A stretch of DNA of 64,000 bases. It comes from Centroscyllium fabricii. Its lineage: Eukaryota. The translations under genes and the position numbers were made by a program. Below the pieces are notes generated by a model. It had not been told where the DNA came from. It did not search any database and saw only the letters and a list, made by a program, of their open reading frames with translations. Positions 101 through 61,645 of this stretch are shown here, one piece after another. The DNA lies in assembly GCA_051313645.2 (NCBI GenBank), contig JBNRSN020000014.1, positions 119,846,001-119,910,000 on the forward strand. The letters run 5' to 3'. Each line of letters begins with the position of its first letter. The stretch's first letter is position 1.

Positions 101-313
101 ATGCCAAACTCTCAATCACATCTCCCAGCGTAATTCGAACTTTTACTGACAATGGGGCAGAAATTCCGATGACCGCGGGGCCGCAGTGCGTGAGTAGGGA
201 GCGGGTACACACGCGTGCGGCCCTGGAATTGTAGGTAGACGCCATTTCCCTGGGATACCTGCAATTCTGAAGAAGACCAGCAGGGGGTCGGGAGCTGAAT
301 CGCATTGGCCTGC

Positions 314-377
314 GCACCAGGATGTGCGCAGTGCACACCAGGAGGTGCGCAGTGCACACCAGGAGGTGCACAGTGCA
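314..377 (+). repeat. 21-bp minisatellite x3 (one unit in copy B)
   Basis: caccaggaggtgcgcagtgca repeated; 42-bp offset change between copies. Confidence 0.9.
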
Positions 378-1664: not shown

Positions 1665-2103
1665 AGTGGACCTCGGAGGCTTGCACACGCAGGAAGCCTC
1701 CGAGGCTAATTTTTGGGCCACTATCAATTCAGTGACTCATGTTTGAAAGGGCATGTGTATTCACTGGGAGACTTTAGCAGAGGGCAGGATTGGCTTCTGC
1801 TGTGATGCTTTCCATAGAGAAATAGCCTGCTCACGTGGCTCACACTCAACGAATAGTTGTTTGGACTGGGTACAGGCCTGTGGCAAATGTACACCAGAAA
1901 TGTTCAATGTTCAAAATTCAGAAGTGATTGAACCGGTGAGAGCATTCTGTCAGCTGTGAAGTTGTTCAACAAGGTGTCTCCTCATCACTGTTTGCTTCAC
2001 AATTGCACTGCACTATGTCGCTTCATAGACTAACTTTGGTTCTGATGTAAATGGTCACAATTCACTCGTCAGGAAACTTGCAATGAAAAGATGCGACACT
2101 TAC

Positions 2104-2231
2104 GTCAAGTTTGAAATTGCCATCAGCTGACTTTCATCCAGAGTACACAAGTTGGCTCCACCAATAGCTTTCAATGAAACTGCGTTTAGAATACCTTCTA
2201 ATTGGAGGTATCTTGTAATGATGGATTTAAC
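2104..2231 (-). CDS. exon e25, downstream module
   Basis: VKSIITRYLQLEG...ISNL then AC|gtaagt; gene continues beyond position 1. Confidence 0.88.
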
Positions 2232-5200
2232 CTGCAGAAGGAATTTTAAAAATTGTTCATACCTCACTGTTACATAGAAGGACGTGTAATTTAAGATGCT
2301 GCTTTATTTGATGCTCGTTTTCCACAAATTTATAACGATGCAATATTTACATAAATTCCAATAATTGCACTATTCTCCTTTTGGAAAATATTTATCAATA
2401 ATCCTTTTAACTGCACATCACATATTGGCCCAGAAATTCAGCTCCCAACGCACGAGTACGGACAGGGTACTCACGCGTAAGCCCAACTAAAGTGCCGGTT
2501 ACGAGCATGCACTGTGCATGCGCGGGAAATGGGCACTCCGTTCCCCTGAATGAAGGGGTTAAGAGATGGAGTGCATTTGCGGGAGCGCCAGCGTGTATGC
2601 ATTGCACTTACAGTTTGTTTGTTTTTTACAGGTTTTTACGTGCGGGTAAGTCTGCAGATTTTACACATGTAAAAAGCACAATGAAACGGCGTTTAGAATA
2701 CCATCTAACTGGAGGTATCTTGTAATAATGGATTTAACCTGCAGAAGGGATTTGAAAATATGTTCATACCTTACTGTTACATAGGACCTATAATTTAAGA
2801 TGCTGCTTTATTTGATGCTCGTTTTCCACAAATTTATAACGACACAATATTTGCATAAAATTCCAATAATTGTGCTATTCTCCTTTTGGAAAATATCCAT
2901 CAATATATTTTTTAATTGCACCTCATATTATTTATCAAATTTCCACTGTACCATTGCCCATTCCCAGCAATTACACACTGTACCCAACTTCCTGCAGCTG
3001 TTTCAAAGCACTGGCCCAAGGTGGTTCCGGTTTCAAGGAAAGACAAAGGGGGCAAAATGGAATCGCGCCCATTTTTGGTGCGCTAACTTCGCTGGGGCGC
3101 TACTTTTAGCACCCCGGAAAAATTAGCACTCCTGCGGCCAAAATTGAGTGGTAGCGCCCCAAGAGGGAAGCGGGGTGCCGCGGTATTGCAGGCCTTCCTC
3201 TCCTTCTTAAAGGAGAAGGGCCATGCATAGAGCGACACCGAGCCCAGTTGGGCCACCGGGGATCGGAGTGCCGGGCTCATGGAGCGCAGCTGGCACTCCG
3301 CGGGGGGGCGGGTCAGGATGCCGCAGACGGTTGCGCAGGCAAGTGCTTGCAGGCGGCCTGCAACAAAAATGGCAGCCCCGCATCTCGCTTTTAAATAGCG
3401 CTGCCCGGCTGCAGGTAGGCCCACCTGACCCCGTCGGACATAGCGTCCGGCAGTAAGACACAGGGGGCGATACCGAAGATCGTGGAAGGGGCGCTGCGCA
3501 CAGTGATGACGTCATCGCCAGTGGCACAGCGCAGCGGGGCGCTAATAGTTACCGCCGCTGTTAACCTCCAGCTGAATTTCGCGGGAGGAGTTGGTGGCGA
3601 CATGCCCGGGCGCGAGTTGCTTTGCGGCCCATTAACGTCCTAACCGTTGGCGCCCTCTTAGGGCGTTAACGGGAGGCACAAAGGAACCGAAATTTTCCCG
3701 CTGAAGGTCTTAAACTTCAGAGAGCAAATTCCACATTTCACTCATGATCAAGTCACATGTCTGCAGATACCAATATTTTCACATTAATATTCTCCTGGTT
3801 TCAGTACCGTTGTGATTTCCAACTGCGGCATCATTAATGCGGAAAGTGTCACAACTTGCGTGATATTCCAGCTGCTGACTTCTGTCGCATTAAACACTGT
3901 GGCTATCCTCCCCAGCAGTTGAATCTGGCTTTCTGGTAGCCCATTGGGATAAATCTGTTTCAGGAAAACCAAAACAATAAAATTCAGTCAATTTGTTAGG
4001 AGTGATCAGCAGTATTCAAATCCAGCTTCAAATTCCTTTTTGGATCTAGAATATTTAGCAACAGATTATTTCCAGATCTGTTCATTAACCCTTGACCTTA
4101 CTGGCTGGAATCTTTACCTTAGAGTCAGGGCGGGAGCGTGCAAACGGCGCAGCGGGTCGCCCTCCCGAAGTTTTCAACAGCGTGTTCTGCACTGAGCGTT
4201 TAACTCAATTACATCAATTGAAACAATCACGTGGGTTTCCTCGGCCAATTAAATGGAGAGCGTCTGATGACGTAACCGATGACTTGCTTTCAGCTCAGGT
4301 ATTTAATGGAGTCTTGCACACATCCCAATTGAAAGTTGTTGGAGGAGGCTTACAGGTGGTTGGGAGTGGTGGCTATTGGTCTATATTGAAGAGATGTGTG
4401 TGGGTGCAAGCAAAGATGGAGCCACAGCGATAGAAGGGTGCGCCCAAGAGAGAACCGGAGGTGGCCCGCCAATATATACTAATTTGACGACTGCAGAGGA
4501 GGCCCTCGAAATAAGTGGCGTGACAGAGCTGCTGGTGGTGGGAGACGGAGAGAGGGGGACCTCCCAGCAACCTGCTAACAGAATTAAATATCCCGCATGA
4601 CATACAACAGTCACTCATGGTGACTAATGTCAGCAGACAGTGAAATATCATCATGTGCATACTGGTAATGTTACACATTCTTATCATAAGTGTTTTATTC
4701 ATGACTTTACTCTCCCACAGGTTCATCAAGAGCACCCACCCCCACTGTCCAACCGGAGGAGGAAGACGACTCTTCAGAGGAAGCTCCATTCTCGGAGGGT
4801 GCACAGTCACCAGACCCATGTGCACTCAGCAGCAGCGCAGATCTACACACATCAGTGGGTCCAGCAGGACATGGAGCAGTGCTGTCACCTGGTGTCTCAT
4901 ACATCTCAAGTGAGCAAGAGCAGATGGTGGAGACAGGGAGAGGAGTGGAGACTCCTCGCTGGAGGGCGCATCACGCTCCAACCTCTGCTCAGCTGGATGC
5001 AGATGCTGAACCTCGGGGGCTTTTCCAGCCACGATCGGTGCGATTGTAGAGAATGGAGAAATCCATCTCTAACATGAGCACCACCATATCACAGGCGATG
5101 GCAACAAAGTGCTGTTCCATGGAAAGGATGGCCTCCTGCATGGAGCAGCTCAGGTGCCAGTCGAATGTGAACAACAGATTGCAGTCTCTCACTGACTTCA

Positions 5201-8200
5201 TCTTTAGGAGGGATACCAACATAGACTTAGACCTTCATTGCCCCACTGCGATGTCCAGTTCCATGCAAGCAGGGAAGTGTAGGTGGCCCATGAGAGGGAT
5301 GATGTTGAGAGGGGTCTTGGAATTGGGGGCTCTGCGCAAAGTGCTCCCACTTCTCCACCACTGACTCCCCCTCAGGCAGAGCCCCACACGCTGCTTCGGA
5401 TCCCGATGGCTGAGTCTGCCCTTGCACAGGTGCAGGAGGAGCAGTCTTTGCCAGGGCCCTCACAGGCCCTAAAACCCAGAGGACATCCATCAAAAGTGTC
5501 GAAGCAGTCACAGCAGAGAAGTAGCAGCCTGCCTCTACCTATTCCCTGGCTGTGGCAGGAAAAGAGCATCCAGAGAAACCAAGAGGGCATAGCTGGAGGG
5601 TGTCTTCCGAAGTTGCTGAAGCCACAGGGGTTGCACCTCGTAGAAGCACTCGGAAAAGAAAAAAGACACAATCGTAGATGCACATGCGTGTTTGACAAAA
5701 TGTTGGTGGTTAAGTTTCACTTCTATTTATGATGCACATAAATTTATTTATTTGCACTACTTTCCCATCTTGTCCATTTTTGCCTGCTACCTGGGAAGTG
5801 GCTGGGTCACCTGAAGTGAATGATGAGACATTACTTAACCTTGAGCAATGAGGGTATGGTTGACATGAATGGTTTGGTCCTTTTAGGACTGCTTTGTGGT
5901 GTTGGTGGGCGGCAGGGGGAGAGAAGTTGGTACAGAATCTGGGAGTCAGATGGTGCACTGGTACAACTTAAGTAAATCGGGCCATTATGAGGCCATCTCC
6001 ACTTCCGGTTCCTTCTCCTCCACCTCGCGTTCCAACTGTTCCTCCTCCTTCGAAGAGGCTGTTCTCTCTGCGCCTTGCTCCTCCTGCAGCGAGCATTTAG
6101 GGAGTGGAAGACTTCCGGTTCACAAACACTCCTGGGTGACATGCGGTTGCCTTGCTAGCCACATATGAGCAGCCAGAGCCGCAACACCGAGCACCCGCTC
6201 AGTAACACTAGCTTCATCAGTGACGACATTTACATACGAGGCTTACGTGTGAAACATGGCATCGGTCTCCTGGGTGATGCATTTGTGGGTGGCCGTCTGA
6301 GAGATCCTGCAAATGTCTGCTGCAGATCCTGGAAAAAGCCTGAGGCGAAGAAGTTGAGGGTGGTGGTGACTTTGACAACCACTGGTAAGGCATGTTCACC
6401 AGGCCCTCTGGGCAGCAGGTCATCTTCCAGCAAGTTACAAATGTCTGCAACGATCTGGCATGATAGCCTGAGCCTCCTGAAGCACTGCCGTTCAATCATG
6501 TCCAGGATGCTCATCTTCTGTCTGTATACCCTGCGTTGAGGGTATAGCCTTCGGCGCGGTGCACCCCTGTGCTGATCCCCTCTTTCATGTGGAGCATCAG
6601 GTCGATGAAGAGAAGGCTGCTGGTGTCGTTGCCGTTGGGGCTCATTTTGGTCCAAATCCGAGTTCCAAGGTGAGACTGCATAACTGGCACCCATGCAGAT
6701 CTGATAGATGCCAGGTAAAGTGGAGATCAGAATTCTCCAATGAAGTGAGAGTGACTTGTAATGTGGGGAGGGTGTCTTCCGAAGTTGCAGAAATCACCTG
6801 CAAACTCCTGAAAGCAAAATCTCTGCACAAAATCGTGTCATCAAGTGGGAGTAAGCCAATGATTGGTCCAGTGAGGATCCTTAGGTTTTGAATGATTGTA
6901 AGGGAACAAGAAGGCAGTCCCGACAACCACAAAGGGTGGAAGATTTCAGGAAGAATCCAGGGGACACCAGAGAGACAAGTGACAAAAGGCACAGGGTGCG
7001 GCCGAGTTACAGTCATGACTTTGACCCAGAGCATAACGGGGTAATGTAAGTCTCAATTATACTCTGTAAACTGCTCTAATACTAAGGTATAAAGCCTTGC
7101 TTGTGTTGAATAAAGTTAAATCACTGTCACCGATACGGGTCAACTTCGAACCTTTTGCAATCAGGGTGCCTCTGGGTCACTTATCTCATAGCTATTTCTG
7201 ATACCTTCCTTTGTGCAAAGTGGTTGTCACATTCCTCTCTATTATAACATCACGGCAATTAAAAAATTGCTTCATTTCCTGTGAAGCACTGTGGGATGGC
7301 CTGAGGCAGTGAAAGGCACTATATAAATGCAAGTACAAAAGCAAAATATCACAGATGCTGGAAATCTGAAATAAAAATGGAAAATGTTGTAAATACACAG
7401 CAGGTCAGGCAGGATCATTGGAGAGACAAAAAGAGTTAATGGTTCAGGTGGATGACCTTTTGACGAACCCGACCTGCTGAGTATTTGCTGCATTTTCTGT
7501 TTTTAGATAAATGCTAATTTCTTCTTTCTCTCTTTTCATACCTGTAATAGTCTCTTTTTCAGAACTTCCAGCTGAGTAGAATCAAAGGCAAGAGATCCCA
7601 GTTGGAGGACATTGTTTTTCAGCACAAGTTTACTCAAACAGAGGTCTAACTGGGCGGCATCATAGATTGCAGGTGTCAGGTCATTAATGGCTTCTGCTGC
7701 TATCGGTCCCTCTGTACAGACTGGAAACAAAACCTTCTATTAGTTATAATACTTCAGTTTGCTGGTAAACATGCTCTCAAAATATCAAAAATGACCATTT
7801 AATCAAAGCCATTCCTGGATTACTGAATTGCCGGTGAAAGGTAACACTGGTGAAATTATAGATCTGCAATTGAAAAAGAATATTTTAGCATCACTTTGCT
7901 ATTTTCAGCATAGTGACCTTACTCTGTCACCCGCAGAACAATGGACACTCAACACAAAGCTATATGGGTTGCGGGACAAGTAAGCAAACTGCACGTGTCC
8001 ATCAAGATCCTCTTGTTCCATTGTTGCTCATGAACAATGTTCCCGCTAAGGTGCCCGTGCACACGGCCGCACAGTAATCTGAAAGGTTATATTGTAAATA
8101 CCGCACATGCACACAAACTTCAAGGGACTCCGCATTAAAAGAAGAAGGCCGCGCAAAACAAAGCGCAGATTCCAGGGAACATTGCTCATGAACTGAGGCT

Positions 8201-53200: not shown

Positions 53201-56200
53201 GAACACAGATCATTTGTATAGGTTGTGGTGCTGCTCCAATATTCTGAACGAATGTCGGGTTTGAGATTACACTGATGAACACCCGAGGATCAATGCGTTG
53301 GAACACACCGCTTGGAATACCAGACAACAAGCTTCCCAGACTCCGCAGATTCTGTGTGCTAGTGACCTAGTTAACAAGCAGAAGACAAATCAAATGTTGT
53401 CAGGAGATGTCACAGGATTAAATCAGTTTTCCACTTTTTGTGGCATGACAGTGCGATTACAAACGTGTCCGCCTCCCCACACAATTGTGCAGAGAAAAGG
53501 TGATGAGAAATAACAGAAAATATTCTGCTGTCACTTCAATTGGCTTCACCTCTCCACACTTGGCTTAAGGGTCAATTCCTCTCTGTTTACACAAGAACCT
53601 GGATCCATAAGGACAATTACACGGTGTTGAAGATCATTGGAACTCATGTAACTCATGCTTCTGCACTTCACTCTCACAGGGTTTTTACGCCAGATCTTTC
53701 CTCCGTTTCATTCAGCCATCTATAATGTATATATAATGTATAATACTATAATGCATTTCTGATTTATTCAGCTCTTACCCGGAAGCCATTTCTGAGTAAC
53801 GTAGTTACAATCGCATTGGCCTGGCCAAAATTCCAGCCTCTGACATTACTCAGGCTTGGCAGGGCTTGCTCCAGAGTGTTCCCATCAATATCGCCAACCT
53901 GTGACAATGACAGTCCGACAGCTGTTTGTCCCAAAGTATTCAAAGTGCTGACTGAAAAGTTGTCAATTTTGCTCACTAAAACTATCGACAGCTGGAAAAG
54001 AAACAGAAATAGCATTAATACTGGACGTCTTTCTCAGCATACACTTTAAGTGAAATCACAAGGTTTTGCAGCAAATATTTCCTATTTACCTTAAGTTGTT
54101 CGTCTGTTGGACCTTCAGCAGGTAATGTTTCATTGGCAGTTGTGTTAGGTGGCATGCTCTGCCCACAGACTTGGTTTATCTTTCCAATCACAGCCAGGAC
54201 TTGCTGTGCACTCAAGGACTGAAGTAGATTAGTGTCGGTAATGAAGCAGACCAGCGAGTCTGGCAGACTGTAAAAGAATGTCAGTCACAGATTGTATTAT
54301 TATATCTTTCAGAACCACAGCGCCCTGTGCCCTGTAGATACATTAAGATATGCTACAAATAAGATCTTTGAAAAATTTCCTAGTGTTGCAGAATATTTTA
54401 CAAGGGTTCATCACCCACTCCCATCTCAAACAGCATATTTTCCTTTGTTCAGCTTACCCTCTATTTTCCCCAAAAATACTTTATTTCGTTTCAAAGTTGC
54501 AATAATTTTTTCATACAAAGATCTGAAATTATTTTTAAAAACTCTCTTTCTCTTTGTCTCTCCCTCTTTCTGTTGCACAGCTGTCAGTAATTAGAATATT
54601 TACATCTTTGAACGTTCAACAAAACAAGGCTTGGGCCTTCAAGTTCTGCAGGGATTATCCTCTCACCAACTGTGAGCTCTTTTTAAACATTAGATCTTTA
54701 AAAAACATTACATTTAAGTTTTTGACTTCTTTTAAAACTGGCTTCAATCAATCAATTCATTTTGTTCAAACTCAGACCACCTGCTCTGACAACCCGTTCC
54801 GCATTCCCTGCCGGCCTTTGTCTTCCCGCCTTCGGGCATCCTGCTCACCCAACCCGCTTGACCTTCGGCTTCTGATGGACTGTTTCCCCATACCCCACTC
54901 TTCTACTTCCCCGCATCCCTGCTCAACAAATTTAGAATACAGTTTTCTTTAAAAAAATTCACAGATCCATAAAGATTATGAACAGAATCTTCCATTTCAC
55001 AACTTATGTTGGGAAAATATGAACTGTGTAAGACTTACCTCGAAATATTAACATTAGGATTGTTTTCAAGCAGCAAGTTGAGGTAGACCTTTGAAATTTC
55101 TGTGGATAATGTCAAATTTGCTAGCAGTCCCAGGTTTTCAGGGTTTACAGCGAATTCTTGAAGCTGCGCAGAGATTAGGAGAAATGACAAATATTGACAC
55201 CAGTGATGCAATGTTCTTTCTATAGTTTAAACAATGAAACTTTAAGGTTCATGTTGCTGCAACACACAATTGTGGTGAATATGGATTCCAACAACACTTC
55301 TCAGTGGCTTTAGTGGCAAACTCCTAATATAAAAGCCGGTCGGGGTATAGTGTCATCTTGGGTGGTTGCACAAAATGGGCGATCATGAATCGGCAGCTCA
55401 TTTTGCACTCCACCCGATTTTCTTATCCATTGACTTTAAATGGACTGCCGATTCGCTCTCTCATGTTTCGTGCTGCGGCCCAACACGAGTTACACCCCAC
55501 AGGAAGCAAAATATTAAATTAGTTGGCAACATAATTCACAGTAGATTTGTCATGCACTCGAAGCTTCATGTAACCCAATCTTTGAGAACAGATCACTTCT
55601 CCCGAGAACCCAATCATTTACCATCCCAATCTTAGAGTAAAAGGAAAATGTGTACCTGTGTTTCATTATCAGAGAAAGACTGAAGATCAGTCAGTGACAC
55701 TTGGTTCATATATAGTCCCAGATATTGAGCAAACCAAGCAGTGGAGTTCAGGGCTGGATCATTTACATTATAGCATTTCGGTCTGGGACCTGTTGTATAA
55801 AATAATTCCACATTAACGCTAAATAAAATGGTGTGTCATTTTTAAAAACATGTTGTAAATTCCACACAATTTTTGCTACCAAAAGGGACTCTCACCTTCC
55901 CCCTCTAGAATTATTGCTCATTTTAAAACAACCTATCTCCCCTCCCCATGGTGGCGATTCTCGCTGGGGTAGAGTACCATGGGTGCCAGCAGCCTGGCAC
56001 TACTCTGCAATTTGTCATGTCTGAGCCTAAACAGGAAGTGTCAGCAGGCTTCTTGACTGCAGAGAATCATAACCCAGCTGGATACCGTTGTGGTAATCAT
56101 GATTACCATTGTATATAGTTGAGTTACACTACAGACCAGCATGTATAGTGGCTGGGTGCATTGTATATAGTTTTGTATAACGACACTGTCGCGAGGTCAG

Positions 56201-59200
56201 GTCAGCCACACCTCTAACTCCTCCCCTCAGGTGAGAGCCTTATAGGTGAGGTCTGACCTGCCCCCATTCATTCTGTACTCAATGTTCGACTGGAGACTAG
56301 CTCCATTCTAAAGTGATTAAAAGCCTATAGTTAAGGTAACTACTCGTCTTTGTCTTATTGACGATACGTCAACCGTCTTCACCGCTCATCAACTCAGACA
56401 CCATTTCTAATAAAGATCTCTGGATGGTGACAGCAGCGAAAACCCTGGCTGATTTTTCACTTTCCTCGTCTAAGACCAGTAAGAATAGTCCCAATTCTGA
56501 GACTTTAAAACAATAGAGTGTAACTTCACCTTGTTGTAGGTAAGCTTTAATGCCATTGTAGATGTCCTTCCGTTTCTCTGATGTAAAGTCACTGTAACCA
56601 GCACTCAGTGTTCTCACACTAAAGGTGAAATTTAACAACATTTTAGAATTTCATCTGCAGATTGAGTTCAATTACTGATAAGTTCAATTTAAAGAACCAC
56701 AATAGAAATGAAGATATTCTAATGATAGAACCAAGAGAGGACAGCTAACCACAATCTTTGTTTGTGCGTGTGTGTGTGTGCGAAGCCCCTCAGACTCTCC
56801 TTTCCTTTTTATTCCTAATTATAGATGATGACCACCAGCAACCTGGATATTAGATATTCTTTATCATATCATATTGTCCTTTCTCAGTGATAAACATTCA
56901 GCTGTAGCTCTCTGCTGATATAATGAGCAAACTAATGCTGGAGAACGATTTACACAGGACAATGAGGGACTTTGCTCACTTGAAGATACATTCGGAACGA
57001 CTGGGATTGTACTTACATTTTCCTGTAGGAAAGGCAGCGAACTCTCAGGGTGTTGTTGGAAGACAAAAGAGAGGTGGTGATAAATGGAAGATATGGAGTT
57101 AGTCTAACATTAAGCCATTCATCCACCTCTGCTTCATTGAGTACAGGCAGGCTGTCGGTAAACTGAGGCCACAGACCCTCTATGATGGCAACTCGGTTAC
57201 CAGCTGACAGATTACTCTGCAAAAGGAAATAGACTTGTTTTAAAACGAAATACTGTAATTGTAACATGATAAAGATTCCCTCAGCTTGCCATGTGATTCT
57301 ACCAAGTAGATCCATTCTTGAAGACTAGCTTTGCTGAACTGGAAACTAGGACTGAGCATTTGTTACAATCAGAGTTAGGCTTTGGAGGGAATCAAATTTT
57401 GGAAACATCTAAAATTGAGCAACCCCCACAGCTGTCACTACAAAGCCCTGAAATGCCAAGAAGCGAACATAAAGAAAAGTCGCCTCAGCCAACTGGCCCT
57501 GGGACTCAGTGAAGTAACTACTAACACTACTAGTAACAACCAGCCCCAGGACAGTGACATCCTAGCACACAGAATTCGACCCAACACAATTATTATTAAA
57601 CAAAGAGAAAAATATTTGTCATACTGGACAGAAACGACAAAAACCCAAAACAAACTAGATTGTTATTTGGCCCTAAACAGACCGTACACCACGGCTGACT
57701 ACCTGACCATGGTGAAAGACAGCAAACTGAGAAAAACCCTGACAATGTACAGACTTAGTGAGGATAACCTAGCCATCGAAGGCAGCAGACACAGACAGAC
57801 TTGGCTGCCCAGAGAGGAACGGCTGTGCTCTCACTGCAGTCAGGGAGTGGTGGAGACAGAGCTGCATTTCCTCACAACCTGTGAAAATTATCAGGACATA
57901 AGGGGGAATTTCAACCCAAAATACATAAAAACATGCCCTGGATTAAAAAATTTGAACGACCACCAAAAACTTCCATATCTATTGGGGGAACAGAGGAACT
58001 GTATAAAATTAGCGGCAAACTACGTCACAGCTTGCCATAAGCAGAGGGACAACCAGTGACCATTGAATCTAAGAAAAGATTATGAGATTTATCTGTGTCT
58101 ATATGTGTATACGTTTGCATATTTATCCATTCACTGTATGTCTAGACCTGCATTTGTATGTTCAATTGTATATGTCCTTTTTCTGTGCTTTGGCAACATA
58201 AGATGTATCTTATTATGCCAATAAAGTAATTTGAATTGAATTGAATAAAATTACTGTTCTGATTCTGATCCACAAGTTTAAGTTATAACATTGCAAACCC
58301 CACCACCCCCATCTGCCTTGTGCTGTTGGCGAGTTCTCTTGTCCGAGTCCAGTCACTGCACACTTGTATGTTCCAATGGGAAATCGTGGAAAACATTCCT
58401 GTGGTCCCCAGATTTCATCCAGACGTTCCTCAGCTGGCTAAGAAATGGGCAGGAAAGAAAAACCTCCACAATCCTTATACCCTGTTAAACCTTGTCCATG
58501 CGCACGTTAAATGTACAGTCAAAGCATCCATACCTTCTTACACCCACACCCTTGCCCTCCTGTTAAAGAGGCATTTAGACTTCCAATAACTACTCCAGGA
58601 CCACAGCCCATATACTCTCACTGCTCCGATATAATGGGCACTATTTTGTTTGAACCACTACAGTTTATCTACATTACATCCTGTGATCTGAAAAGTAAAA
58701 TAACAGTTGCAGCTCACTTTGCCGCTTTTTTGATTGAATTCATCTATGAATGTAGCCAGATTCTGGATGGGCTGAATGTAGAATAACACTGTGGTCAGAA
58801 TCTTGTTGTCATTAATGAATCCAGGCTTGCTCAGCATATCAGCCAATTCACTGGGATCAGTGACATTCAACACCTGTAAAAACACAATGAGGAATTTCTC
58901 AACTTCATGTAAATAACTGGCAGCAGACCATGTAAAGCAGCTGAATGCACGGCATCACTAGATTAAACTTGTAAAATATTAGTGCCAATCACGGCCACTG
59001 TTAATCCTGTTTCATGTTACAGACCAGCATGACTTGAGTTCACACTCACAAGCCTGGTCCTGAAACACTTCACAACGCTGACTCAACCCCCAGGGGAGGG
59101 GTTTGTTGGATATGAGGGGCTTCTTCTGAGGGCCACGGGGAAAATAATCGAATGGGTCAATGTGAAGCAGTATTATGCTCTTTCTCGGAACATGTCACAC

Positions 59201-61645
59201 AACACTTGGATAAAGGTAACTTCCCTGGCCTCTCAGTCAGCAACTAGCACATGGCGCACGAGCTTGAAGGATCAGAAAATTGGCTTCCCATCCCTCTCCC
59301 CCATGAAGCCATTGGTGAAAATAACCTAGACCGGTTTTCTGCTCAAGCAGCTGAGTTTCTAACTCACTTCGCTATCCAGCTGCTCAAAATGTACCCACAG
59401 TTCAAATCAGGCCCAGTGTTCGCGGGCTTCATCCAAGGGAAGACACACTCTAAAATTGCTAGACTCACTGCAGCTGCTACTAGAATATCAGGTGAGTAAA
59501 GCTCACCTGGAAACACAGACACCCAGCCCAGTTCACAAAAGAAAAATAATTTTGTTTTACCTCAACAGCACGTTTGGAAGGAAGCAGGAAGAACGCATCA
59601 GTCAGAGTTAGCAACTCAGAGAACCTTTGGAAATAGGTGTCCACGTAGACAACATAACTGTTGCCTTCATAACAACGAAGTGGGATTGCTGGGAGAAAGA
59701 GGGAAAATATTAGGTCAATTTGCAAACATAGATGTCAACTTCTCATTAATTGTAAACATCTGAAACCCATATTATGCAGCAGGGTAACACATGCAGAGTT
59801 ATTGATTAACAGATATTCAGAACCAAAAACTCATTTAATGTTCTCTTTCATTCACAACTGCCTTTCTAGCTTACCTGTGGTGTTGAGGTAACCGAAGATC
59901 CACACTTTCAGCACAGACTCTCTTGTTCCACGTGTCATATCATTGAATCCGTTGCTCAGTCCTTTTACACTAAATGGATAAACATTGATAGTATTATTTA
60001 TTAGATATCAGCTCTGTAGTAATCCTTCAGCTGGTGGAGAACAATTTTAGGATCTTTCCCTAATGATGCTCAATGATCAGGTCTGGTGTCAGTAACTGAA
60101 AGCTGGTGCCAGTATCTGTCCCATGGTGATGAACCTCTCTCAGGGATCAGTTCCAAAATGGGCTGATAAAAATCTCCTGTTTTTAGGTCTTTTCTTTCAT
60201 TTTTCGCACCAATCTTCTCCCTTCTTCTTCAGACAGTCTATCTCCTTACTGCAGTACAATTCCACAGCCATGGGGCACCCTCTGGTAACTCAGGCTGCTG
60301 AAGAATCTTAATGACAGAGCTGAAGTATTTCAGTACCAGTGACCAGCTCTAAATCTATCTAATTCTTGGGACTCATACAGCACACATTCGCGTCATGCAG
60401 AATATTTTATACAGTGACTTCTTGCAGTATTCTGAATTACCAGGAGGAAAAGCCTGAGGCTTGGATCTAGCAATACTGACACACTGGGCAGTCAGTCTCA
60501 CCTGTTACTGAATTGTGTTTGGAGCTTGAAATTCCGACAGTCTGTATAAGGCACTTCATACTAAGGGGGGGAATTTCATGTCCCCATGAGGTGGGGTTTT
60601 CGGCGGCTCGGCCGGCAAAATAGCACAACCAGTGTGTCGCGACCCTCCCCGCCGTATCCCCGCCGCTTTATCATTTTCCACCGCCCCAAAACCTTCCCGC
60701 CGCCGGCCGGCGGGGATGGGTTGTCACCTCGTTAAGAGCCCTTAATTGGGATGATTAATGCCATTTTAACGGCCCTCAGCCATTTTGAGCTATTTCCCGC
60801 CCTAACCCCATCACCTTAAACCCCGCTGGGTGAAACCCAGTGGGAGCACAGCGCTGGTTATTACTTTTTCCTTCAAGATGTGAAGGACATGCTGCCAAAT
60901 GCTTGACATGCCTCCAGCACCTTAGAGGAGTAAGTTACTCCGTAGTTGCTGCAACAGCTGTGAGCAAAAACTGAGAAATCTCAGCTTTGCACATTTGCTC
61001 ACAGCCGGTGCGAGCTGTCAAGGATTCTGAGCCCGCCCGCCCACCTGTCAGTCATCAGCACTCACCTTTCCCATTGGTTCCACTCGACTATGATGTCACA
61101 GTGGAGTGTTTCCATGGGAACTGTCAACAACCAGTGCTGGAACTGTCAATCAAACTCCTTGCAGCCCATCCCGATTGAGTTAATTACCACCCGCTGCCGC
61201 CGGCGTGGATTTAACAACTCAATTAAATTAAAATTGCGTGGGCTTCCCAGCTGTTTGGGCGGGCGGGACAGGAAGCCACCCAGACCAATCCCCGCCTGGT
61301 TCCCGTCCTTCCGGCAAAGTCCCCTCCTAAGTGTGCTCTCTGACTATTCACGATTTAAAATGTTTTGACAGGGATTGCTTTTCCAGTTGAATATGCAGCA
61401 ATGGATTATTGTAAAAGAGAGTCATTCACTCACACTGCTTGGTAACCATCACAAGTTATGTTTCTTGTCAAAAGGCGGCTCAGCACTGACTGAGAAGTGC
61501 CAGCAATGAACGGCCTGAATCGCTCCTGGAACCATTTTTTCAGGAAAGTTGCACTGGTTAAGTTTTCATTGGTCTTCACAATCTCCCACAGGGCATTCAT
61601 GAACGTGATCTTTGTCATCAGAGGAATTGCTGATGTGTTCAGGGT
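2104..61645 (-). CDS. Partial multi-exon gene: giant mesothelin-like protein of tandem 1262-aa modules (52 exons in window, no start or stop seen)
   Basis: Manually traced GT-AG exons with compatible phases throughout. Peptides match mesothelin motifs: IYPNGLPESQIQLLG vs LYPQGYPESVIQHLG; GGASADDLKYLANNRVNMDFATF vs GGAPTEDLKALSQQNVSMDLATF; LGLTGGIP vs LGLGLQGGIP. Orthology (MSLN vs MSLNL) not resolved. Confidence 0.88.
2679..2930 (-). pseudogene. Older local duplicate of the e25 acceptor and first 60 coding nt (copy B about 38103-38354)
   Basis: Direct repeat of about 2172-2426; reads cag|VKSIITRYLQLDGILNAVSL then CFLHV-stop. Confidence 0.85.
3047..3701. mobile_element. GC-rich non-autonomous DNA transposon/MITE (copy B about 38471-39124)
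   Basis: Reverse complement of its end (gggaaaatttcggttcctttgtgcctcccgtt) matches the starts at 30171 and 16698/17109. Confidence 0.65.
3808..3954 (-). CDS. exon e24, downstream module
   Basis: IYPNGLPESQIQLLG..WNITQVVTLSALM. Confidence 0.9.
4103..7028. mobile_element. Degenerate PIF/Harbinger transposon (ends approximate)
   Basis: Minus-strand HARBI1-like RRLRLS..HALPVVVKVTTTLNFFASGFFQ and FVNRKSFHSLN-like remnants; plus-strand RTGGGPP motif of the Myb/SANT partner; convergent layout. Confidence 0.82.
7337..7505. mobile_element. Short Penelope-like hairpin repeat after a SINE 3' tail (copy B about 41625-41793)
   Basis: cagatgctggaaatctgaaataaaa..cagcaggtcagg / cgacctgctgagtatt inverted arms; preceded by aaaggcactatataaatgcaagt. 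Confidence 0.55.
7542..7720 (-). CDS. exon e23, downstream module
   Basis: CTEGPI..YDAAQLDLCL..QLEVLKKRL. Confidence 0.9.
8460..8580 (-). CDS. exon e22, downstream module
   Basis: VVLNEALPRF...RGRSNNTA. Confidence 0.85.
9278..9365 (-). CDS. exon e21, downstream module
   Basis: VPSSWSSSTIRDLGNLPL (mesothelin GPPSTWS-like). Confidence 0.88.
10153..10343 (-). CDS. exon e20, downstream module
   Basis: LGVLVCDLEG..SD..LKNC..KYG. Confidence 0.88.
11621..11750 (-). CDS. exon e19, downstream module
   Basis: CQTFFKLVGKSNINIL..ARTCL. Confidence 0.88.
12602..12687 (-). CDS. exon e18, downstream module
   Basis: LDCMAARL..FPVDVLLFF. Confidence 0.88.
12970..13167 (+). mobile_element. HE1-type SINE, 5'-truncated (copy B 47258-47538 keeps the 3' tail)
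   Basis: ccgggtgctccggtttcctcccacagtccaaagatgtgc V-SINE core. Confidence 0.85.
13785..15425 (-). mobile_element. CR1 LINE, 5'-truncated and decayed
   Basis: QHGFMKGKSCLTN and YVNDLD..KFADDTK fragments; aagaacataagaaatagg tail. Confidence 0.92.
15516..15636 (-). CDS. exon e17, downstream module
   Basis: FSPSVLQGFSCGAV...LDESQ. Confidence 0.88.
16708..17108 (-). mobile_element. Full-length HE1-type tRNA/V-SINE
   Basis: tRNA-like head (tggcacagtggttagc A box, ggttcaaatcc B box), V core, CR1-like 3' tail. Confidence 0.9.
17109..17748. mobile_element. GC-rich MITE, same family as 3047 and 30171 (copy B about 51502-52140)
   Basis: aatttggttgctttccgcctgccgttagcgc head; first bases lie left of the SINE at 16698. 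Confidence 0.62.
18251..18300 (-). CDS. exon e16, downstream module
   Basis: SAVFFEYVVRNSNNFK. Confidence 0.82.
18492..18629 (-). CDS. exon e15, downstream module
   Basis: VKNIPSVLAKEVPP..NKQWVPSQ. Confidence 0.88.
18802..18972 (-). CDS. exon e14, downstream module
   Basis: VTSTQNLRSLGSLLSGIPS... Confidence 0.88.
19385..19597 (-). CDS. exon e13, downstream module
   Basis: LGQTAVGLS..LPSLSNVRGWNFGQA. Confidence 0.88.
19696..19873 (-). CDS. exon e12, downstream module
   Basis: LPDSLVCF...EGPTDEQLK. Confidence 0.85.
20639..20763 (-). CDS. exon e11, downstream module
   Basis: LQEFAVNPENLGLL... Confidence 0.85.
21256..21389 (-). CDS. exon e10, downstream module
   Basis: GPRPKCYNVNDPALNSTAWFAQYLG... 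Confidence 0.85.
21689..21971 (+). mobile_element. Solo LTR
   Basis: TGT...TCA termini with perfect 5-bp target site duplication ACCGT; ATTAAA near the 3' end. Confidence 0.85.
22130..22218 (-). CDS. exon e9, downstream module
   Basis: VRTLSAGYSDFTSEKRKDIYNGIKAYLQQ. Confidence 0.85.
22615..22814 (-). CDS. exon e8, downstream module
   Basis: SNLSAGN..WLNVRLTPYL..CLSYRK. Confidence 0.85.
22920..23843 (+). mobile_element. LINE 3' fragment, RTE-X-like
   Basis: 225-aa ORF with RLS..LAIE.GR..REERLCSHC..ETELHFLTTC Cys/His motif; AATAAA then (TTGAA)n; clade call tentative. Confidence 0.75.
24316..24471 (-). CDS. exon e7, downstream module
   Basis: VLNVTDPSEL...NQKSGK. Confidence 0.85.
25159..25286 (-). 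CDS. exon e6, downstream module
   Basis: AIPLRCYEGNSYVVYVDTYFQRF... Confidence 0.85.
25473..25567 (-). CDS. exon e5, downstream module
   Basis: VKGLSNGFNDMTRGTRESVLKVWIFGYLNTT. Confidence 0.85.
26161..26922. mobile_element. GC-rich MITE-like element (copy B about 60564-61325)
   Basis: GGGGGGAATTT / AAAGTCCCC ends; CpG-rich arms inside an AT-rich intron. Confidence 0.5.
27031..27242 (-). CDS. exon e4, downstream module
   Basis: TLNTSAIP..WFQERFRPF..CDGYQAV. Confidence 0.85.
28298..28465 (-). CDS. exon e3, downstream module
   Basis: IDLLLSG...DKFNNK; phase 0-0. Confidence 0.85.
28592..28735 (-). mobile_element. CR1 3' tail fragment
   Basis: aagaacataagaattaggagcaggagtagg..gatcatggctgatc. 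Confidence 0.8.
28869..28950 (-). CDS. exon e2, downstream module
   Basis: STLNNFLTEVNMSQLCNFNITDYACAE; phase 2-0. Confidence 0.85.
29222..29249 (-). CDS. micro-exon e1 of downstream module (28 nt, ETTLCAAVNS)
   Basis: ttttcaaacag|AAACAACATTGTGTGCAGCTGTGAACAG|gtaaga; phase 1-2. Confidence 0.78.
29345..29366 (-). CDS. micro-exon e30 (22 nt, PGKTTVN)
   Basis: tctcttccttag|CCTGGTAAAACCACAGTTAATG|gtgagt; phase 0-1. Confidence 0.72.
29609..29625 (-). CDS. micro-exon e29 (17 nt, EPQPDT)
   Basis: tattttcag|AACCCCAACCTGATACG|gtaaga; phase 1-0. Confidence 0.68.
29781..31373. mobile_element. MITE-like element with nested MITE at about 30171-30938
   Basis: Inverted ends GATTTTCATT / AATGAAAATC; inner element begins gggcaggaaattcggt. 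Confidence 0.6.
31668..31827 (-). CDS. exon e28 (end of mesothelin domain)
   Basis: KLNSQNL...LGLTGGIPDNSS then G|gtaatt; phase 0-1. Confidence 0.88.
32326..32722 (+). mobile_element. Full-length HE1-type SINE
   Basis: gggcggcacggtggcacagtggttagc..ggttcaaatcc..V core..ttctatgtt tail. Confidence 0.92.
33048..33142 (-). CDS. exon e27
   Basis: GGASADDLKYLANNRVNMDFATFKGLDPEEVK; phase 1-0. Confidence 0.9.
34163..34296 (-). CDS. exon e26
   Basis: DAGALDLSVCTQSKKNLLY...IKVYV; phase 2-1, in frame with e25 at 37528. Confidence 0.88.
34425..35553 (+). mobile_element. CR1 LINE 3' part, decayed
   Basis: MEYNVEKCEVIHFG..HLEYCVQ..LEAVQRRFTRLIP ORF plus 3' UTR. Confidence 0.92.
36321..37088 (+). mobile_element. 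Rex1/Babar LINE 3' fragment (copy B)
   Basis: Duplicate of 897-1664. Confidence 0.88.
37528..37655 (-). CDS. exon e25, upstream module
   Basis: VKSIITRYL..GGANLCTLD..; phase 0-2. Confidence 0.88.
39231..39377 (-). CDS. exon e24, upstream module
   Basis: IYPNGLPESQIQLLG..WNIT..; phase 0-0. Confidence 0.9.
39526..41316. mobile_element. Degenerate PIF/Harbinger transposon, copy B, with 1137-bp deletion
   Basis: Duplicate of 4103-7028 lacking 5361-6497. Confidence 0.82.
41830..42008 (-). CDS. exon e23, upstream module
   Basis: CTEGPI..QLDLCL..QLEVLKKRLLQ; phase 1-0. Confidence 0.9.
42748..42868 (-). CDS. exon e22, upstream module
   Basis: VVLNEAL...RGRSNNTA; phase 0-1. Confidence 0.85.
43566..43653 (-). 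CDS. exon e21, upstream module
   Basis: VPSSWSSST...QVNR; phase 2-0. Confidence 0.88.
44441..44631 (-). CDS. exon e20, upstream module
   Basis: RISGRNLT..LGVLVCDL..SKYG; phase 0-2. Confidence 0.88.
45908..46037 (-). CDS. exon e19, upstream module
   Basis: SAHF..CQTFFKLVGKSN..ARTCL; phase 2-0. Confidence 0.88.
46890..46975 (-). CDS. exon e18, upstream module
   Basis: LDCMAARL...PVDVLLFF; phase 0-2. Confidence 0.88.
48185..49826 (-). mobile_element. CR1 LINE, decayed (copy B)
   Basis: Duplicate of 13785-15425 with one extra frameshift. Confidence 0.92.
49917..50037 (-). CDS. exon e17, upstream module
   Basis: FSPSVLQGFSC...LDESQ; phase 2-0. Confidence 0.88.
51101..51501 (-). mobile_element. 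Full-length HE1-type SINE (copy B)
   Basis: Duplicate of 16708-17108. Confidence 0.9.
52643..52692 (-). CDS. exon e16, upstream module
   Basis: SAVFFEYVVRNSNNFK; phase 0-2. Confidence 0.82.
52886..53023 (-). CDS. exon e15, upstream module
   Basis: VLRYVKD...KQWVPSQ; phase 0-0. Confidence 0.88.
53196..53366 (-). CDS. exon e14, upstream module
   Basis: VTSTQNLRSLGSLLSGIPS...CVLQ; phase 0-0. Confidence 0.88.
53779..53991 (-). CDS. exon e13, upstream module
   Basis: LSIVLVSK..LGQTAVGLS..RNGFR; phase 0-0. Confidence 0.88.
54090..54267 (-). CDS. exon e12, upstream module
   Basis: LPDSLVCF...DEQLK; phase 2-0. Confidence 0.85.
55039..55163 (-). CDS. exon e11, upstream module
   Basis: LQEFAVN...NVNIS; phase 0-2. 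Confidence 0.85.
55656..55789 (-). CDS. exon e10, upstream module
   Basis: GPRPKCY...DNETQ; phase 1-0. Confidence 0.85.
56089..56371 (+). mobile_element. Solo LTR (copy B)
   Basis: Same termini and ACCGT duplication. Confidence 0.85.
56530..56618 (-). CDS. exon e9, upstream module
   Basis: VRTLSAG...AYLQQ; phase 2-1. Confidence 0.85.
57017..57216 (-). CDS. exon e8, upstream module
   Basis: SNLSAGN...CLSYRK; phase 0-2. Confidence 0.85.
57322..58245 (+). mobile_element. LINE 3' fragment, RTE-X-like (copy B)
   Basis: Duplicate of 22920-23843. Confidence 0.75.
58718..58873 (-). CDS. exon e7, upstream module
   Basis: VLNVTDP...NQKSGK; phase 0-0. Confidence 0.85.
59561..59688 (-). CDS. exon e6, upstream module
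   Basis: AIPLRCY...KRAVE; phase 1-0. Confidence 0.85.
59875..59969 (-). CDS. exon e5, upstream module
   Basis: VKGLSNGF...GYLNTT; phase 2-1. Confidence 0.85.
61434..61645 (-). CDS. mesothelin-like exon e4, upstream module
   Basis: AG/GT; TLNTSAIP...CDGYQAV; phase 0-2. Confidence 0.85.

What the first reader, a model, noticed from the sequence alone, without database searches (positions are those of the whole stretch)
2104..61645. Poly-mesothelin: whole mesothelin-like gene bodies concatenated in frame into one giant protein
Seen: the ~35-kb repeat carries 30 exons totalling 3786 nt (1262 codons), and the traced frame runs from one unit into the next. I found no stop, GPI-signal exon, start or signal peptide between them. 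Known: mammalian mesothelin ends shortly after the GGIP motif with a GPI-anchor signal and is about 620 aa. Inference: this is an intragenic array encoding a very long extracellular superhelical filament (at least ~2290 aa here), possibly variable in copy number. An annotation pipeline could easily split it into tandem paralogs. I do not know of a described case but could not search for one.
Basis: partly seen in the sequence, partly recalled or inferred. Interest (0 to 1): 0.92.

Follow-up and report, generated by a model that had tools for sequence, protein, structure and literature searches.

The report
Giant shark gene of chained mesothelins
This shark-like genome carries a gene in which whole mesothelin-type protein bodies, each built from 30 exons over about 35 kb, are strung together in one reading frame, an architecture seen in database models of other sharks and rays that my searches did not find described in print.

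Summary
The window holds a ~35.4-kb tandem repeat (1-28047 vs 35454-62450, 98.3-99.4% identical). A minus-strand cycle of 30 exons has canonical splice sites, totals 3786 nt (1262 codons), has no stop, and starts and ends in the same phase. The three micro-exons that join one unit to the next (17, 22 and 28 nt) are not chance picks. Their translations match the linkers of multi-unit mesothelin-family models from other sharks and rays. Three intron-free (cDNA-like) contigs from relatives run from the end of one mesothelin body into the next unit. The two copies differ by 8 exonic substitutions, 7 of them synonymous. Other shark models carry the same adjacent unit pair, 90-99% identical within a species and 76-80% between species, which points to concerted evolution. 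I found no signal-peptide exon, terminal exon or unique promoter between the units. Each unit is about twice a mammalian mesothelin: a ~640-aa extension without a Pfam family, then a PF06060 region. Not shown: RNA from this species (no RNA run found), the gene's ends (outside the window) and the unit count. DNA contigs from two animals do not carry the A/B differences as fixed. Verdict: real multi-unit gene, new variant of a known family.

The parts
1..35453 (-). Repeat unit A plus the inter-unit segment: one full ~35.4-kb period of the tandem repeat
   Evidence: Self-BLAST; position 1 aligns with 35454.
35454..62450 (-). Repeat unit B, 98.3-99.4% identical to 1-28047
   Evidence: 181 substitutions in 26,544 aligned bases.
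31668..31827 (-). e27 (160 nt), last exon of a mesothelin body. It ends ...GLTGGIPDNSS and leaves 1 nt.
   Evidence: 83% identical to P0002 1705-1758.
33048..33142 (-). e26 (95 nt)
   Evidence: PF06060 profile 504-533, E 0.0017.
34163..34296 (-). e25 (134 nt)
29609..29625 (-). Linker micro-exon m1 (17 nt), (E)PQPDT
   Evidence: flanked by ttttcag and gtaaga.
29345..29366 (-). Linker micro-exon m2 (22 nt), PGKTTVN
   Evidence: best place in the window for a homologue linker peptide.
29222..29249 (-). Linker micro-exon m3 (28 nt), (E)TTLCAAVN(S), with a conserved Cys and N-glycosylation sequon
   Evidence: best place in the window for 3 of 3 homologue peptides, z 6.7-7.6.
28869..28950 (-). e1 of unit A (82 nt), STLNNFLTEVNMSQLCNFNITDYACAE
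   Evidence: matches the post-signal-peptide start of Callorhinchus P0015.
28298..28465 (-). e2 of unit A (168 nt)
27031..27242 (-). e3 of unit A (212 nt); copy B is 61434-61645
   Evidence: The ORF holding it found 90 proteins at E<=0.001.
25473..25567 (-). e4 A (95 nt); B 59875-59969
25159..25286 (-). e5 A (128 nt); B 59561-59688
24316..24471 (-). e6 A (156 nt); B 58718-58873
22615..22814 (-). e7 A (200 nt); B 57017-57216
22130..22218 (-). e8 A (89 nt); B 56530-56618
21256..21389 (-). e9 A (134 nt); B 55656-55789
20639..20763 (-). e10 A (125 nt); B 55039-55163
19696..19873 (-). e11 A (178 nt); B 54090-54267
19385..19597 (-). e12 A (213 nt); B 53779-53991
18802..18972 (-). e13 A (171 nt); B 53196-53366
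18492..18629 (-). e14 A (138 nt); B 52886-53023
18251..18300 (-). e15 A (50 nt), SAVFFEYVVRNSNNFK; B 52643-52692
   Evidence: score 65 vs next 19.
15516..15636 (-). e16 A (121 nt), where the PF06060-like region starts; B 49917-50037
   Evidence: Weak PF06060 hit on the B-copy ORF 49830-50063, profile 61-121, E 0.13.
12602..12687 (-). e17 A (86 nt); B 46890-46975
11621..11750 (-). e18 A (130 nt); B 45908-46037
   Evidence: PF06060 profile 132-171, E 1.2e-4.
10153..10343 (-). e19 A (191 nt); B 44441-44631
   Evidence: PF06060 profile 175-236, 29.0 bits, above the 25.8 cut-off.
9278..9365 (-). e20 A (88 nt); B 43566-43653
8460..8580 (-). e21 A (121 nt); B 42748-42868
7542..7720 (-). e22 A (179 nt); B 41830-42008
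3808..3954 (-). e23 A (147 nt), IYPNGLPES...; B 39231-39377
   Evidence: PF06060 profile 361-401, E 9.6e-6.
2104..2231 (-). e24 A (128 nt), the last exon of unit A inside the window; B 37528-37655
   Evidence: It carries the only non-synonymous A/B difference (E>D).
29800..31000 (.). GC- and CpG-rich high-copy repeat inside the e27-m1 intron; not a unique promoter island
   Evidence: CpG o/e 0.58-0.99 and 64-81% matches to other places in the window; summed word depth of about 30,000 to 546,000 in the bins from 29842 to 30500 (and 9,592-27,094 in bin 29675-29841), against 40-80 in unique bins.
62451..64000 (-). LINE-type retroelement in the e2-e3 intron of unit B; it ends the A/B alignment
   Evidence: ORF 62546-64000 matches RVT_1 at E 5.9e-36.

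Best explanation
The window is the middle of one very large minus-strand gene of the mesothelin family, of the long non-mammalian msln type.

The building block is a 30-exon, 3786-nt (1262-codon) unit spread over ~35.4 kb. It comprises three linker micro-exons, a ~640-aa all-helical N-terminal extension, and a ~620-aa PF06060 mesothelin region ending in ...GLTGGIP. The unit begins and ends in intron phase 1 and its length is a multiple of three, so units spliced head to tail stay in frame.

The window shows unit B (e3-e27), the linker, and unit A (e1-e24), together about 2290 codons. By analogy with complete models in relatives, the whole protein has one signal peptide, four or more mesothelin bodies and one hydrophobic GPI-type tail. 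It would be a heavily N-glycosylated alpha-solenoid chain on the cell surface, with 25 sequons per unit.

Adjacent units are kept nearly identical within a species by gene conversion or unequal crossing-over.

Shown here: the exon cycle, the frame, the homology of the linker, purifying selection on both copies, and the same architecture in other species. Inferred: splicing in this species, GPI anchoring, the fold, the homogenisation mechanism, and the function (adhesion or surface coat).
For: - Exon cycle and frame.
- Linker micro-exons match homologue linkers and are the best places in the window for those peptides.
- Multi-body models. P0002 (Rhincodon, 4700 aa) has 4 PF06060-like regions; 10 of the 55 proteins that matched (115 were searched) carry parts of 2 or more bodies. 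P0116 (Stegostoma) is 7881 aa and P0124 (Amblyraja) 7628 aa. Narcine 7394, Pristis 6965, Heterodontus 5078, Pristiophorus 5038, Heptranchias 4538 and S. torazame 3482 aa.
- Intron-free contigs cross a junction. P0005 and P0127 are 3067-aa ORFs on 10.5-kb contigs; P0130 is 254 aa on a 1,111-nt contig and covers the e26-e3 equivalents, which span 6.1 kb in the window.
- Selection. Exonic divergence is 8/3080 against 173/23,464 intronic (Fisher p 0.001). Of the 8 exonic changes, 7 are synonymous (binomial p 6e-4).
- Family. PF06060 hits on 4 of the 10 exons searched, colinear with the profile. Homologues score E 1e-85 to 1e-132.
- Fold. The P0009 model is all-helical and its best Foldseek hits are human mesothelin.
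- Between the units there is no homologue-like signal peptide or tail exon and no hydrophobic terminal exon. The only GC-rich stretch is a high-copy repeat.
- Adjacent units are 90-99% identical within four other shark species and 76-80% between species.
Against: - No RNA of this species could be examined; one search found 4 runs, none recorded as RNA. Use of the three micro-exons here is therefore inferred from conservation.
- Most supporting long proteins are automatic gene models, which could share a systematic fusion error. Only 3 unnamed contigs are transcript-like, and I judged that from ORF-to-contig length alone. All three carry the short linker type, so m1 and m2 have model-level support only.
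- An in-frame ATG at 29036 with a signal-peptide-like stretch could start a unit-sized product.
- DNA contigs from two animals do not carry the A/B differences as fixed paralogue differences. Some sites show only A letters, some only B, and four sites show both. The number of near-identical units in this species is therefore not settled.
- The gene's ends are outside the window.
- The structure model has moderate confidence (pLDDT 68.5, pTM 0.33) and is of a relative, not of this window.
Confidence: 0.82

Rival explanations
1. Tandem paralogous genes. Each ~35-kb unit is its own gene. It starts at the ATG at 29036 (signal-peptide-like MLRIQNKLFCCLFLSVISSL..., in frame with e1). The upstream gene ends by read-through after e27. 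The micro-exon chain would then be an artefact that gene predictors also make.
For: The ATG at 29036 is in frame and hydrophobic. There is no RNA from this species. Most multi-unit proteins are automatic models.
Against: The hydrophobic stretch is the translated polypyrimidine tract of the e1 acceptor. m3 and m2 are conserved as coding sequence across sharks, rays and a chimaera. Intron-free contigs cross the junction in relatives. Read-through after e27 gives a 34-aa non-hydrophobic tail, and I found only 2 poly(A)-like hexamers in 2.7 kb, neither placed after that stop. The GC-rich segment is a high-copy repeat.
Confidence: 0.07
2. Assembly artefact. Copies A and B are the two haplotypes of one unit wrongly laid in tandem, so this species has one fewer such unit. 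The head-to-tail joint e27-linker-e1 would still be real.
For: A and B are 99% identical including introns. In DNA contigs from two animals the A/B differences are not both present at most sites. Only B letters appear at 25967-26135, only A letters at 27335-27571 and at 27759, and both only at 27628-27682. No listed loose end marks the LINE joint of copy B, though 798 rows were not shown.
Against: There is no N or gap in the window. The copies differ by a 1.1-kb indel, a 110-bp indel and a LINE, and one contig runs through both. The same adjacent pair of near-identical units (90-99%) is present in the models of four other shark species. Similar pairs occur in catfish (99.6%) and axolotl (92%). 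Where both letters are seen, the B letters make up 22-36% of the depth rather than about half; this is weak evidence.
Confidence: 0.08
3. Polyprotein. The long in-frame transcript is made, but the product is cut into unit-sized mesothelin-like proteins, as mammalian mesothelin precursor is cut by furin.
For: Mammalian precursor processing (my own knowledge). A ray homologue has RRRR/KR motifs at the position that corresponds to the mammalian site (P0010).
Against: No R-x-[KR]-R motif lies within any of the 30 exons of the unit (motifs spanning exon joints were not scanned); the linker holds no such motif and its only basic residue is one Lys. The linker carries conserved sequons and a Cys instead.
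Confidence: 0.08

Closest known systems
Mammalian mesothelin (MSLN; Pfam PF06060; structures 7UED, 8CX3, 8FSL)
   Same: The second half of each unit aligns colinearly with PF06060 (exons e16-e26). The close relative P0009 matches human mesothelin chains at E 1e-31 by sequence, and they are its best fold hits. The body ends in a GGIP-type motif.
   Different: The mammalian protein is a single ~620-aa body with its own signal peptide, a furin site and a GPI signal (my own knowledge). Here each body has an extra ~640-aa N-terminal extension. No furin-type motif was found. The body is followed by a 22-residue linker and the next body, not by a GPI signal.
Automatic multi-unit models in other cartilaginous fishes: XP_048465576.1 Rhincodon typus 4700 aa, XP_059510198.1 Stegostoma tigrinum 7881 aa, XP_032896963.1 Amblyraja radiata 7628 aa, and models from Pristis pectinata (6965 aa), Pristiophorus japonicus (5038 aa) and others
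   Same: The same unit (55-86% identity per exon), the same ~1261-1263-aa spacing, the same three-part linker, and the same pair of adjacent near-identical units.
   Different: They are named 'uncharacterized protein', and I found no paper describing them. Many are cut at the N-terminus. Here the genomic anatomy is laid out: 30 exons, phases, 35.4-kb period, 99% identity including introns.
Long single-body fish and amphibian mesothelins (mslna/mslnb; e.g. Callorhinchus A0A4W3JVW9, 1496 aa; Microcaecilia mesothelin, 1536 aa)
   Same: An N-terminal extension with e3-type modules followed by one PF06060 region. The signal peptide leads directly into an e1-like sequence, and there is a hydrophobic C-terminal tail.
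   Different: One body per protein. In teleost mslnb the N-terminal module is what is multiplied (up to 21 matched stretches), not the whole body.
Otoancorin and stereocilin
   Same: Same superfamily. PMC2628672 (search listing and passages seen) predicts an ARM-type superhelix for all three. They are also long proteins with a mesothelin-like C-terminal part.
   Different: The best exon scores only 12 bits against the Stereocilin Pfam model, whose cut-off is 26.6. Both are single-body proteins.
Apolipoprotein(a) kringle IV-2 and MUC16 SEA-domain arrays (comparison from my own knowledge)
   Same: Multi-exon units repeated in frame inside one gene. The units are near-identical within a species and prone to copy-number change. 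MUC16 is also mesothelin's binding partner in mammals.
   Different: Those units are small (about 114-156 aa, 2-5 exons, a few kb). Here the unit is 1262 aa, 30 exons and 35 kb, which is a whole gene body.

Membership tests
Mesothelin family (Pfam PF06060) | Sequence match to the PF06060 profile | tested here: met
   Tested exon by exon; the joined model was not searched, by rule. e19 scores 29.0 bits (cut-off 25.8, E 4.2e-7), e23 24.5 bits, e18 20.9 bits and e26 17.1 bits. The B-copy ORF holding e16 scores E 0.13. The hits follow profile order: 61-121, 132-171, 175-236, 361-401, 504-533. Six of the 10 exons gave no hit on their own. Homologues that are 55-86% identical to the exons score E 1e-85 to 1e-132.
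Mesothelin family (Pfam PF06060) | Alpha-solenoid (ARM-type) fold like solved mesothelin | tested here: inconclusive
   Tested only on a relative. The P0009 model (17-row alignment, pLDDT 68.5, pTM 0.33) is all-helical. Its top 7 Foldseek hits are human mesothelin chains (E 1e-9 to 3e-7, TM by target 0.51-0.61), followed by HEAT/ARM solenoids. The window's own spliced product was not folded, by rule.
Mesothelin family (Pfam PF06060) | One N-terminal signal peptide and one C-terminal GPI-type hydrophobic tail per protein | tested here: inconclusive
   No homologue-like signal-peptide or tail exon was found in the window, and no hydrophobic terminal exon after e27. The gene ends lie outside the window. 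Complete relatives have both features at their ends only, read by eye.
Mammalian-type mesothelin precursor | Single ~620-aa body with a furin site between MPF and mature mesothelin | tested here: not met
   The unit is 1262 codons and is followed in frame by another unit. No R-x-[KR]-R motif lies within any exon.
Long non-mammalian msln type (mslna/mslnb-like) | N-terminal extension with e3-type modules ahead of the PF06060 region | tested here: met
   The ORF holding e3 finds 90 proteins at E<=0.001. The named ones among those I looked up are mesothelin-like, mslna, mslnb or uncharacterized. In these proteins the PF06060 region follows the extension.
Stereocilin (Pfam PF21058) | Match to the Stereocilin profile | tested here: not met
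   The only hit is e19 at 12 bits, E 0.11, against a cut-off of 26.6. The homologues show no hit.

The most novel reading that the evidence does not exclude
Jawed vertebrates ancestrally had a giant poly-mesothelin: one signal peptide, four or more complete mesothelin bodies and one GPI tail. Its 30-exon, ~35-kb units are continually homogenised, gained and lost by gene conversion and unequal crossing-over. Unit number and sequence therefore differ between individuals and lineages, and the 620-aa mammalian mesothelin is a reduced remnant. Because every unit boundary is in phase 1, skipping whole units would also give in-frame isoforms. The protein may coat sperm or epithelia as a variable adhesive filament; the catshark orthologue model scyTo_0003439 is listed in a spermatozoa proteome.
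Probability: 0.35. Interest if true: 0.75.

Novelty: new variant of a known kind. Interest (0 to 1): 0.62.

Why it matters
Mesothelin is studied almost only as a 40-kDa human tumour antigen, and its normal function is unclear. This locus shows that in cartilaginous fishes the family's gene is a chain of complete mesothelin bodies. Models from an axolotl and a catfish point the same way.

It also gives the genomic rule that allows the chain. The unit is 3786 nt, both of its boundaries are in phase 1, and three conserved micro-exons serve as the linker.

Three things follow:
- It is one of the largest repeat units I know of inside a gene (35 kb, 30 exons) that still evolves in concert. That comparison is from my own knowledge.
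- It warns annotators that such loci may be split into paralogues or truncated. Many of the public models start in the middle of a unit.
- It offers natural material for asking what mesothelin bodies bind and how solenoid modules behave when chained.

A sperm proteome listing of the catshark orthologue gives a first place to look for function.

Tried and rejected
- Pfam on ten long minus-strand ORFs gave no family above threshold; the only trace was PF06060 at E 0.13. Trimming to mapped exons gave four colinear hits.
- Rfam found nothing in the window.
- RNA evidence: the run search listed 4 runs from one study and two samples, none recorded as RNA. Splicing in this species therefore stayed unchecked. 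Reads were laid on the A/B question instead. It returned short DNA contigs whose depth cannot give copy number.
- Direct e27>e1 splicing without the micro-exons was rejected. The best donor/acceptor pair scored 4.4, against 5.5-10.7 for the 24 resolved junctions.
- A unique CpG-island promoter between the units was rejected: the segment is a high-copy repeat.
- A terminal or GPI exon between the units was rejected. The one hydrophobic candidate (acceptor at 29339) sits 6 nt inside the m2 donor and has a poor pyrimidine tract. tblastn with 8 C-terminal tails and 8 N-termini of homologues found only the e1-like part of P0015. That test is weak, because such peptides diverge fast.
- Self-BLASTP of the long proteins returned only the identity hit. 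I compared cut-out units instead.
- One literature search was too broad to be useful. The others (and passages of PMC2628672) turned up no description of multi-body mesothelins. That is the whole basis of my 'not in print' statement.
The supplements of PMC11083954 might say more about the peptides assigned to scyTo_0003439.
- The search of earlier findings never opened.
Full report
WHAT IS IN THE SEQUENCE

The window has no N. It is a tandem repeat. Segment 1-28047 matches 35454-62450 in three blocks of 98.3-99.4% identity. The blocks are separated by a 1.1-kb stretch present only in copy A (5361-6497) and a 110-bp stretch present only in copy B (47456-47565). The alignment stops at 62450, where copy B carries a LINE-type retroelement whose ORF at 62546-64000 matches RVT_1 at E 5.9e-36. 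Position 1 aligns with 35454, so the period is about 35.4 kb and the repeat probably continues to the left of the window.

THE GENE MODEL

The ORF holding one long minus-strand exon (27030-27266) was searched against 1.84 billion proteins. It found 90 proteins at E<=0.001, many of them 2,000-6,000 aa long with several matched stretches. The whale-shark model P0002 (XP_048465576.1, 4700 aa) aligns to the window exon after exon at 55-86% identity, with a period of about 1261 residues.

I used P0002 as guide and asked, for each pair of neighbouring matches, for a GT donor and an AG acceptor that are phase-compatible, free of stops and correct in residue count. For 24 of 26 pairs the best solution was within 1 residue of the guide. 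The other two pairs contain further exons. One is a 50-nt exon at 18300-18251 (alignment score 65 against 19 for the next candidate).

Walking the cycle gives 30 exons and 3786 nt. No exon has a stop, every exon is flanked by AG and GT, and one nucleotide is left over at both entry and exit. Everything on the window itself was done exon by exon.

THE JOINT BETWEEN UNITS

The last exon of a body (31827-31668) ends ...GLTGGIPDNSS. It is followed by three micro-exons:
- 29625-29609, encoding (E)PQPDT
- 29366-29345, encoding PGKTTVN
- 29249-29222, encoding (E)TTLCAAVN(S)

The first large exon of the next unit follows at 28950-28869. Chains of tiny exons can be found by chance, so I tested them against independent data.

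First, the corresponding stretch in other species' proteins matches. Rhincodon has EPRPTDRPVNATVNETTLCRAVNSS, Pristiophorus has EPEPGDTPGKTTVNETTLCAAVNSS, and similar linkers occur in Stegostoma, Chiloscyllium, Heptranchias, Heterodontus, Scyliorhinus, Hypanus, Amblyraja and Pristis.

Second, I slid linker peptides from four homologues over all six frames of the 64-kb window. Micro-exon 3 was the best place for 3 of 3 peptides (36 vs 26, z 7.6) and micro-exon 2 for its one peptide (29 vs 26). Micro-exon 1 ranked third, because five residues are too few.

Third, some relatives are known from contigs that cannot be genomic. P0005 and P0127 are 3067-residue ORFs on 10.5-kb contigs. P0130 is 254 residues on a 1,111-nt contig and covers the equivalents of e26, e27, a short linker, e1, e2 and e3, which span 6.1 kb here. 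All three pass from ...GGSP or ...GSIP straight into the next unit. That they are transcripts is my inference from ORF and contig lengths. They carry the short linker type (m3-like only), so m1 and m2 rest on models and conservation alone.

IS THERE AN END AND A START BETWEEN THE UNITS?

- Read-through past the e27 donor adds 34 non-hydrophobic residues.
- A scan for phase-compatible terminal exons with a hydrophobic tail found one poor candidate, inside the m2 donor.
- The C-terminal tails of 8 homologues and the N-termini of 8 homologues found nothing in the window except the mature e1-like part of the Callorhinchus protein.
- The only GC- and CpG-rich stretch (about 29800-31000) matches other places in the window. 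Its summed word depth in DNA runs is about 30,000 to 546,000 in the bins from 29842 to 30500, against 40-80 in unique parts. It is a high-copy repeat, not a private promoter island.

One point favours a separate start. An ATG at 29036 is in frame with e1 and encodes a signal-peptide-like stretch. That stretch is the polypyrimidine tract of the e1 acceptor, which naturally translates into Leu, Phe and Ser. I cannot exclude it as a minor internal start.

ARE BOTH COPIES FUNCTIONAL, AND IS THE DUPLICATION REAL?

Copies A and B differ by 181 substitutions in 26,544 aligned bases. The exonic rate is 8/3080 and the intronic rate 173/23,464 (Fisher p 0.001). Of the 8 exonic changes, 7 are synonymous and 1 is E>D (binomial p 6e-4 against 73% expected non-synonymous). 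There are no exonic indels. Both copies have therefore been under purifying selection.

The single read-laying run put DNA contigs of four runs (two animals, one study) on 25500-30500:
- Contigs run through 28047/28048 (the A-type continuation) in all four runs.
- The A/B differences (listed) are not both present at most sites. Only B letters are seen at 25967-26135. Only A letters are seen at the seven sites 27335-27571 and at 27759. Both are seen only at 27628-27682, in 3 of 4 runs, with B letters at 22-36% of the depth.

So these differences are not fixed paralogue markers in those animals. Taken alone, this could mean that A and B are haplotypes laid in tandem by mistake. Three things argue against that. 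One gap-free contig passes through both copies. The copies differ by three structural changes. Most important, the same adjacent pair exists in independent assemblies of other sharks. The two units that end in this linker type are 96.2% identical in Pristiophorus, 97.3% in Heterodontus, 99.1% in Heptranchias and 90.0% in Rhincodon, whereas units compared between species are 76-80% identical.

High similarity within a species and lower similarity between species is the signature of concerted evolution or recurrent duplication. A mosaic, unfixed pattern in reads is what ongoing conversion would give. Near-identical internal units also occur in a catfish model (99.6% over 1403 aa) and an axolotl model (92% over 1627 aa), alongside old units at 45-60%.

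WHAT FAMILY IT IS

Exon by exon, PF06060 (Mesothelin) is hit by:
- e18: profile 132-171, E 1.2e-4
- e19: profile 175-236, 29.0 bits against a cut-off of 25.8
- e23: profile 361-401, E 9.6e-6
- e26: profile 504-533, E 0.0017
- the B-copy ORF holding e16: profile 61-121, E 0.13

The hits are in profile order. Six of the ten exons gave nothing on their own. Homologues score E 1e-85 to 1e-132 and carry source names such as 'Mesothelin-like protein', 'mesothelin', 'mslna' and 'mslnb', but most are 'uncharacterized protein'.

The first half of the unit (e1-e15, about 640 aa) has no Pfam family. It contains two copies of the e3-type module, which teleost mslnb proteins multiply up to 21 times.

A model of the sawshark relative P0009 was built from a 17-row alignment (pLDDT 68.5, pTM 0.33). 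P0009 covers one mesothelin region, a linker, and 470 residues of the next unit. The model is all-helical on both sides and below pLDDT 50 in part of the linker (579-595). Its best Foldseek hits are human mesothelin structures (E 1e-9, TM by target 0.51-0.63), followed by HEAT/ARM solenoids. By sequence it matches mesothelin chains at E 1e-31.

Each unit has 25 N-glycosylation sequons and 21 Cys counted within exons, and no R-x-[KR]-R motif.

HOW IT MOST LIKELY WORKS

Complete relatives have one signal peptide at the start, internal bodies joined by linkers, and one hydrophobic tail after the last, more divergent body. Examples are the Pristis model of 6965 aa with three internal junctions, and the Stegostoma model with GGIP-type motifs at 1860, 3663, 4924, 6372 and 7823.

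I therefore read this window as the middle of such a gene. The product would be a very long, glycosylated chain of alpha-solenoid bodies, held on the cell surface by a GPI-type anchor, with short glycosylated linkers that are probably flexible. The anchor, the fold and the flexibility are inferences. Because each unit is 3786 nt with phase-1 boundaries, units can be gained, lost or skipped without breaking the frame. That is the simplest reason why the array can evolve by unequal exchange.

A lead on where it acts: the cloudy-catshark model scyTo_0003439 (P0137, 3482 aa, with the same linker) is entry 37 in Table 2 of PMC11083954, the differentially abundant spermatozoa proteins of small-spotted catsharks. 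I saw passages only.

NOVELTY

The family is known. The multi-body architecture is present in public automatic annotation for at least a dozen cartilaginous fishes, plus an axolotl and a catfish. My literature searches (and passages of the 2009 structural paper) found no description of it. My corrections concern unit size, which is twice a mammalian mesothelin, and the existence of these database models. I rate it a new variant of a known kind, interest 0.62.

Still open: RNA proof in this species, the unit count, the gene ends, and the function.

Noticed in passing
window 2611-2738 (copy A) and 38037-38162 (copy B), minus strand: A partial duplicate of exon e24 lies 507 bp upstream in the e23-e24 intron. 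It keeps the acceptor (cccttctgcag) and the first 20 codons at 85-90% identity to homologues, then runs into a stop after 25 codons. It is a decoy or pseudo-exon, present in both copies.
   Followed up: partly
window 29387, in the intron between micro-exons m1 and m2: All four DNA runs carry a 20-nt insertion here relative to the window, about 21 nt upstream of the m2 acceptor. The depth bin that holds m1 (29508-29674) is low in 3 of 4 runs.
   Followed up: no
window 12967-13167, 16709-17109, 32325-32725, 47255-47536, 51102-51502: A SINE-like family of about 400 bp, 91-95% identical between copies and found in both orientations. A related piece at 28592-28719 sits in a bin with summed word depth of 2.6-4.0 million in the DNA runs.
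   Followed up: no
window 801-1523 (+), 14466-15391 (-), and their copy-B counterparts: Degenerate retroelement ORFs inside introns. 14466-14780 and 14993-15391 hit RVT_1 (E 2.7e-7 and 3.2e-4). 801-1523 hits ALKBH8_N at E 2e-19.
   Followed up: partly
P0003 (Dicentrarchus labrax mslnb 'isoform X35'), P0001 (Serrasalmus, 4003 aa, 21 matched stretches): Teleost relatives multiply the ~190-aa e3-type N-terminal module rather than the whole body. At least one has dozens of predicted isoforms. This is a second, different way in which this family grows.
   Followed up: no
window 5361-6497 (copy A only): A 1.1-kb stretch absent from copy B. The 187-aa ORF at 6233-6793, which straddles its right edge, has no Pfam match. 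Its nature was not determined.
   Followed up: partly
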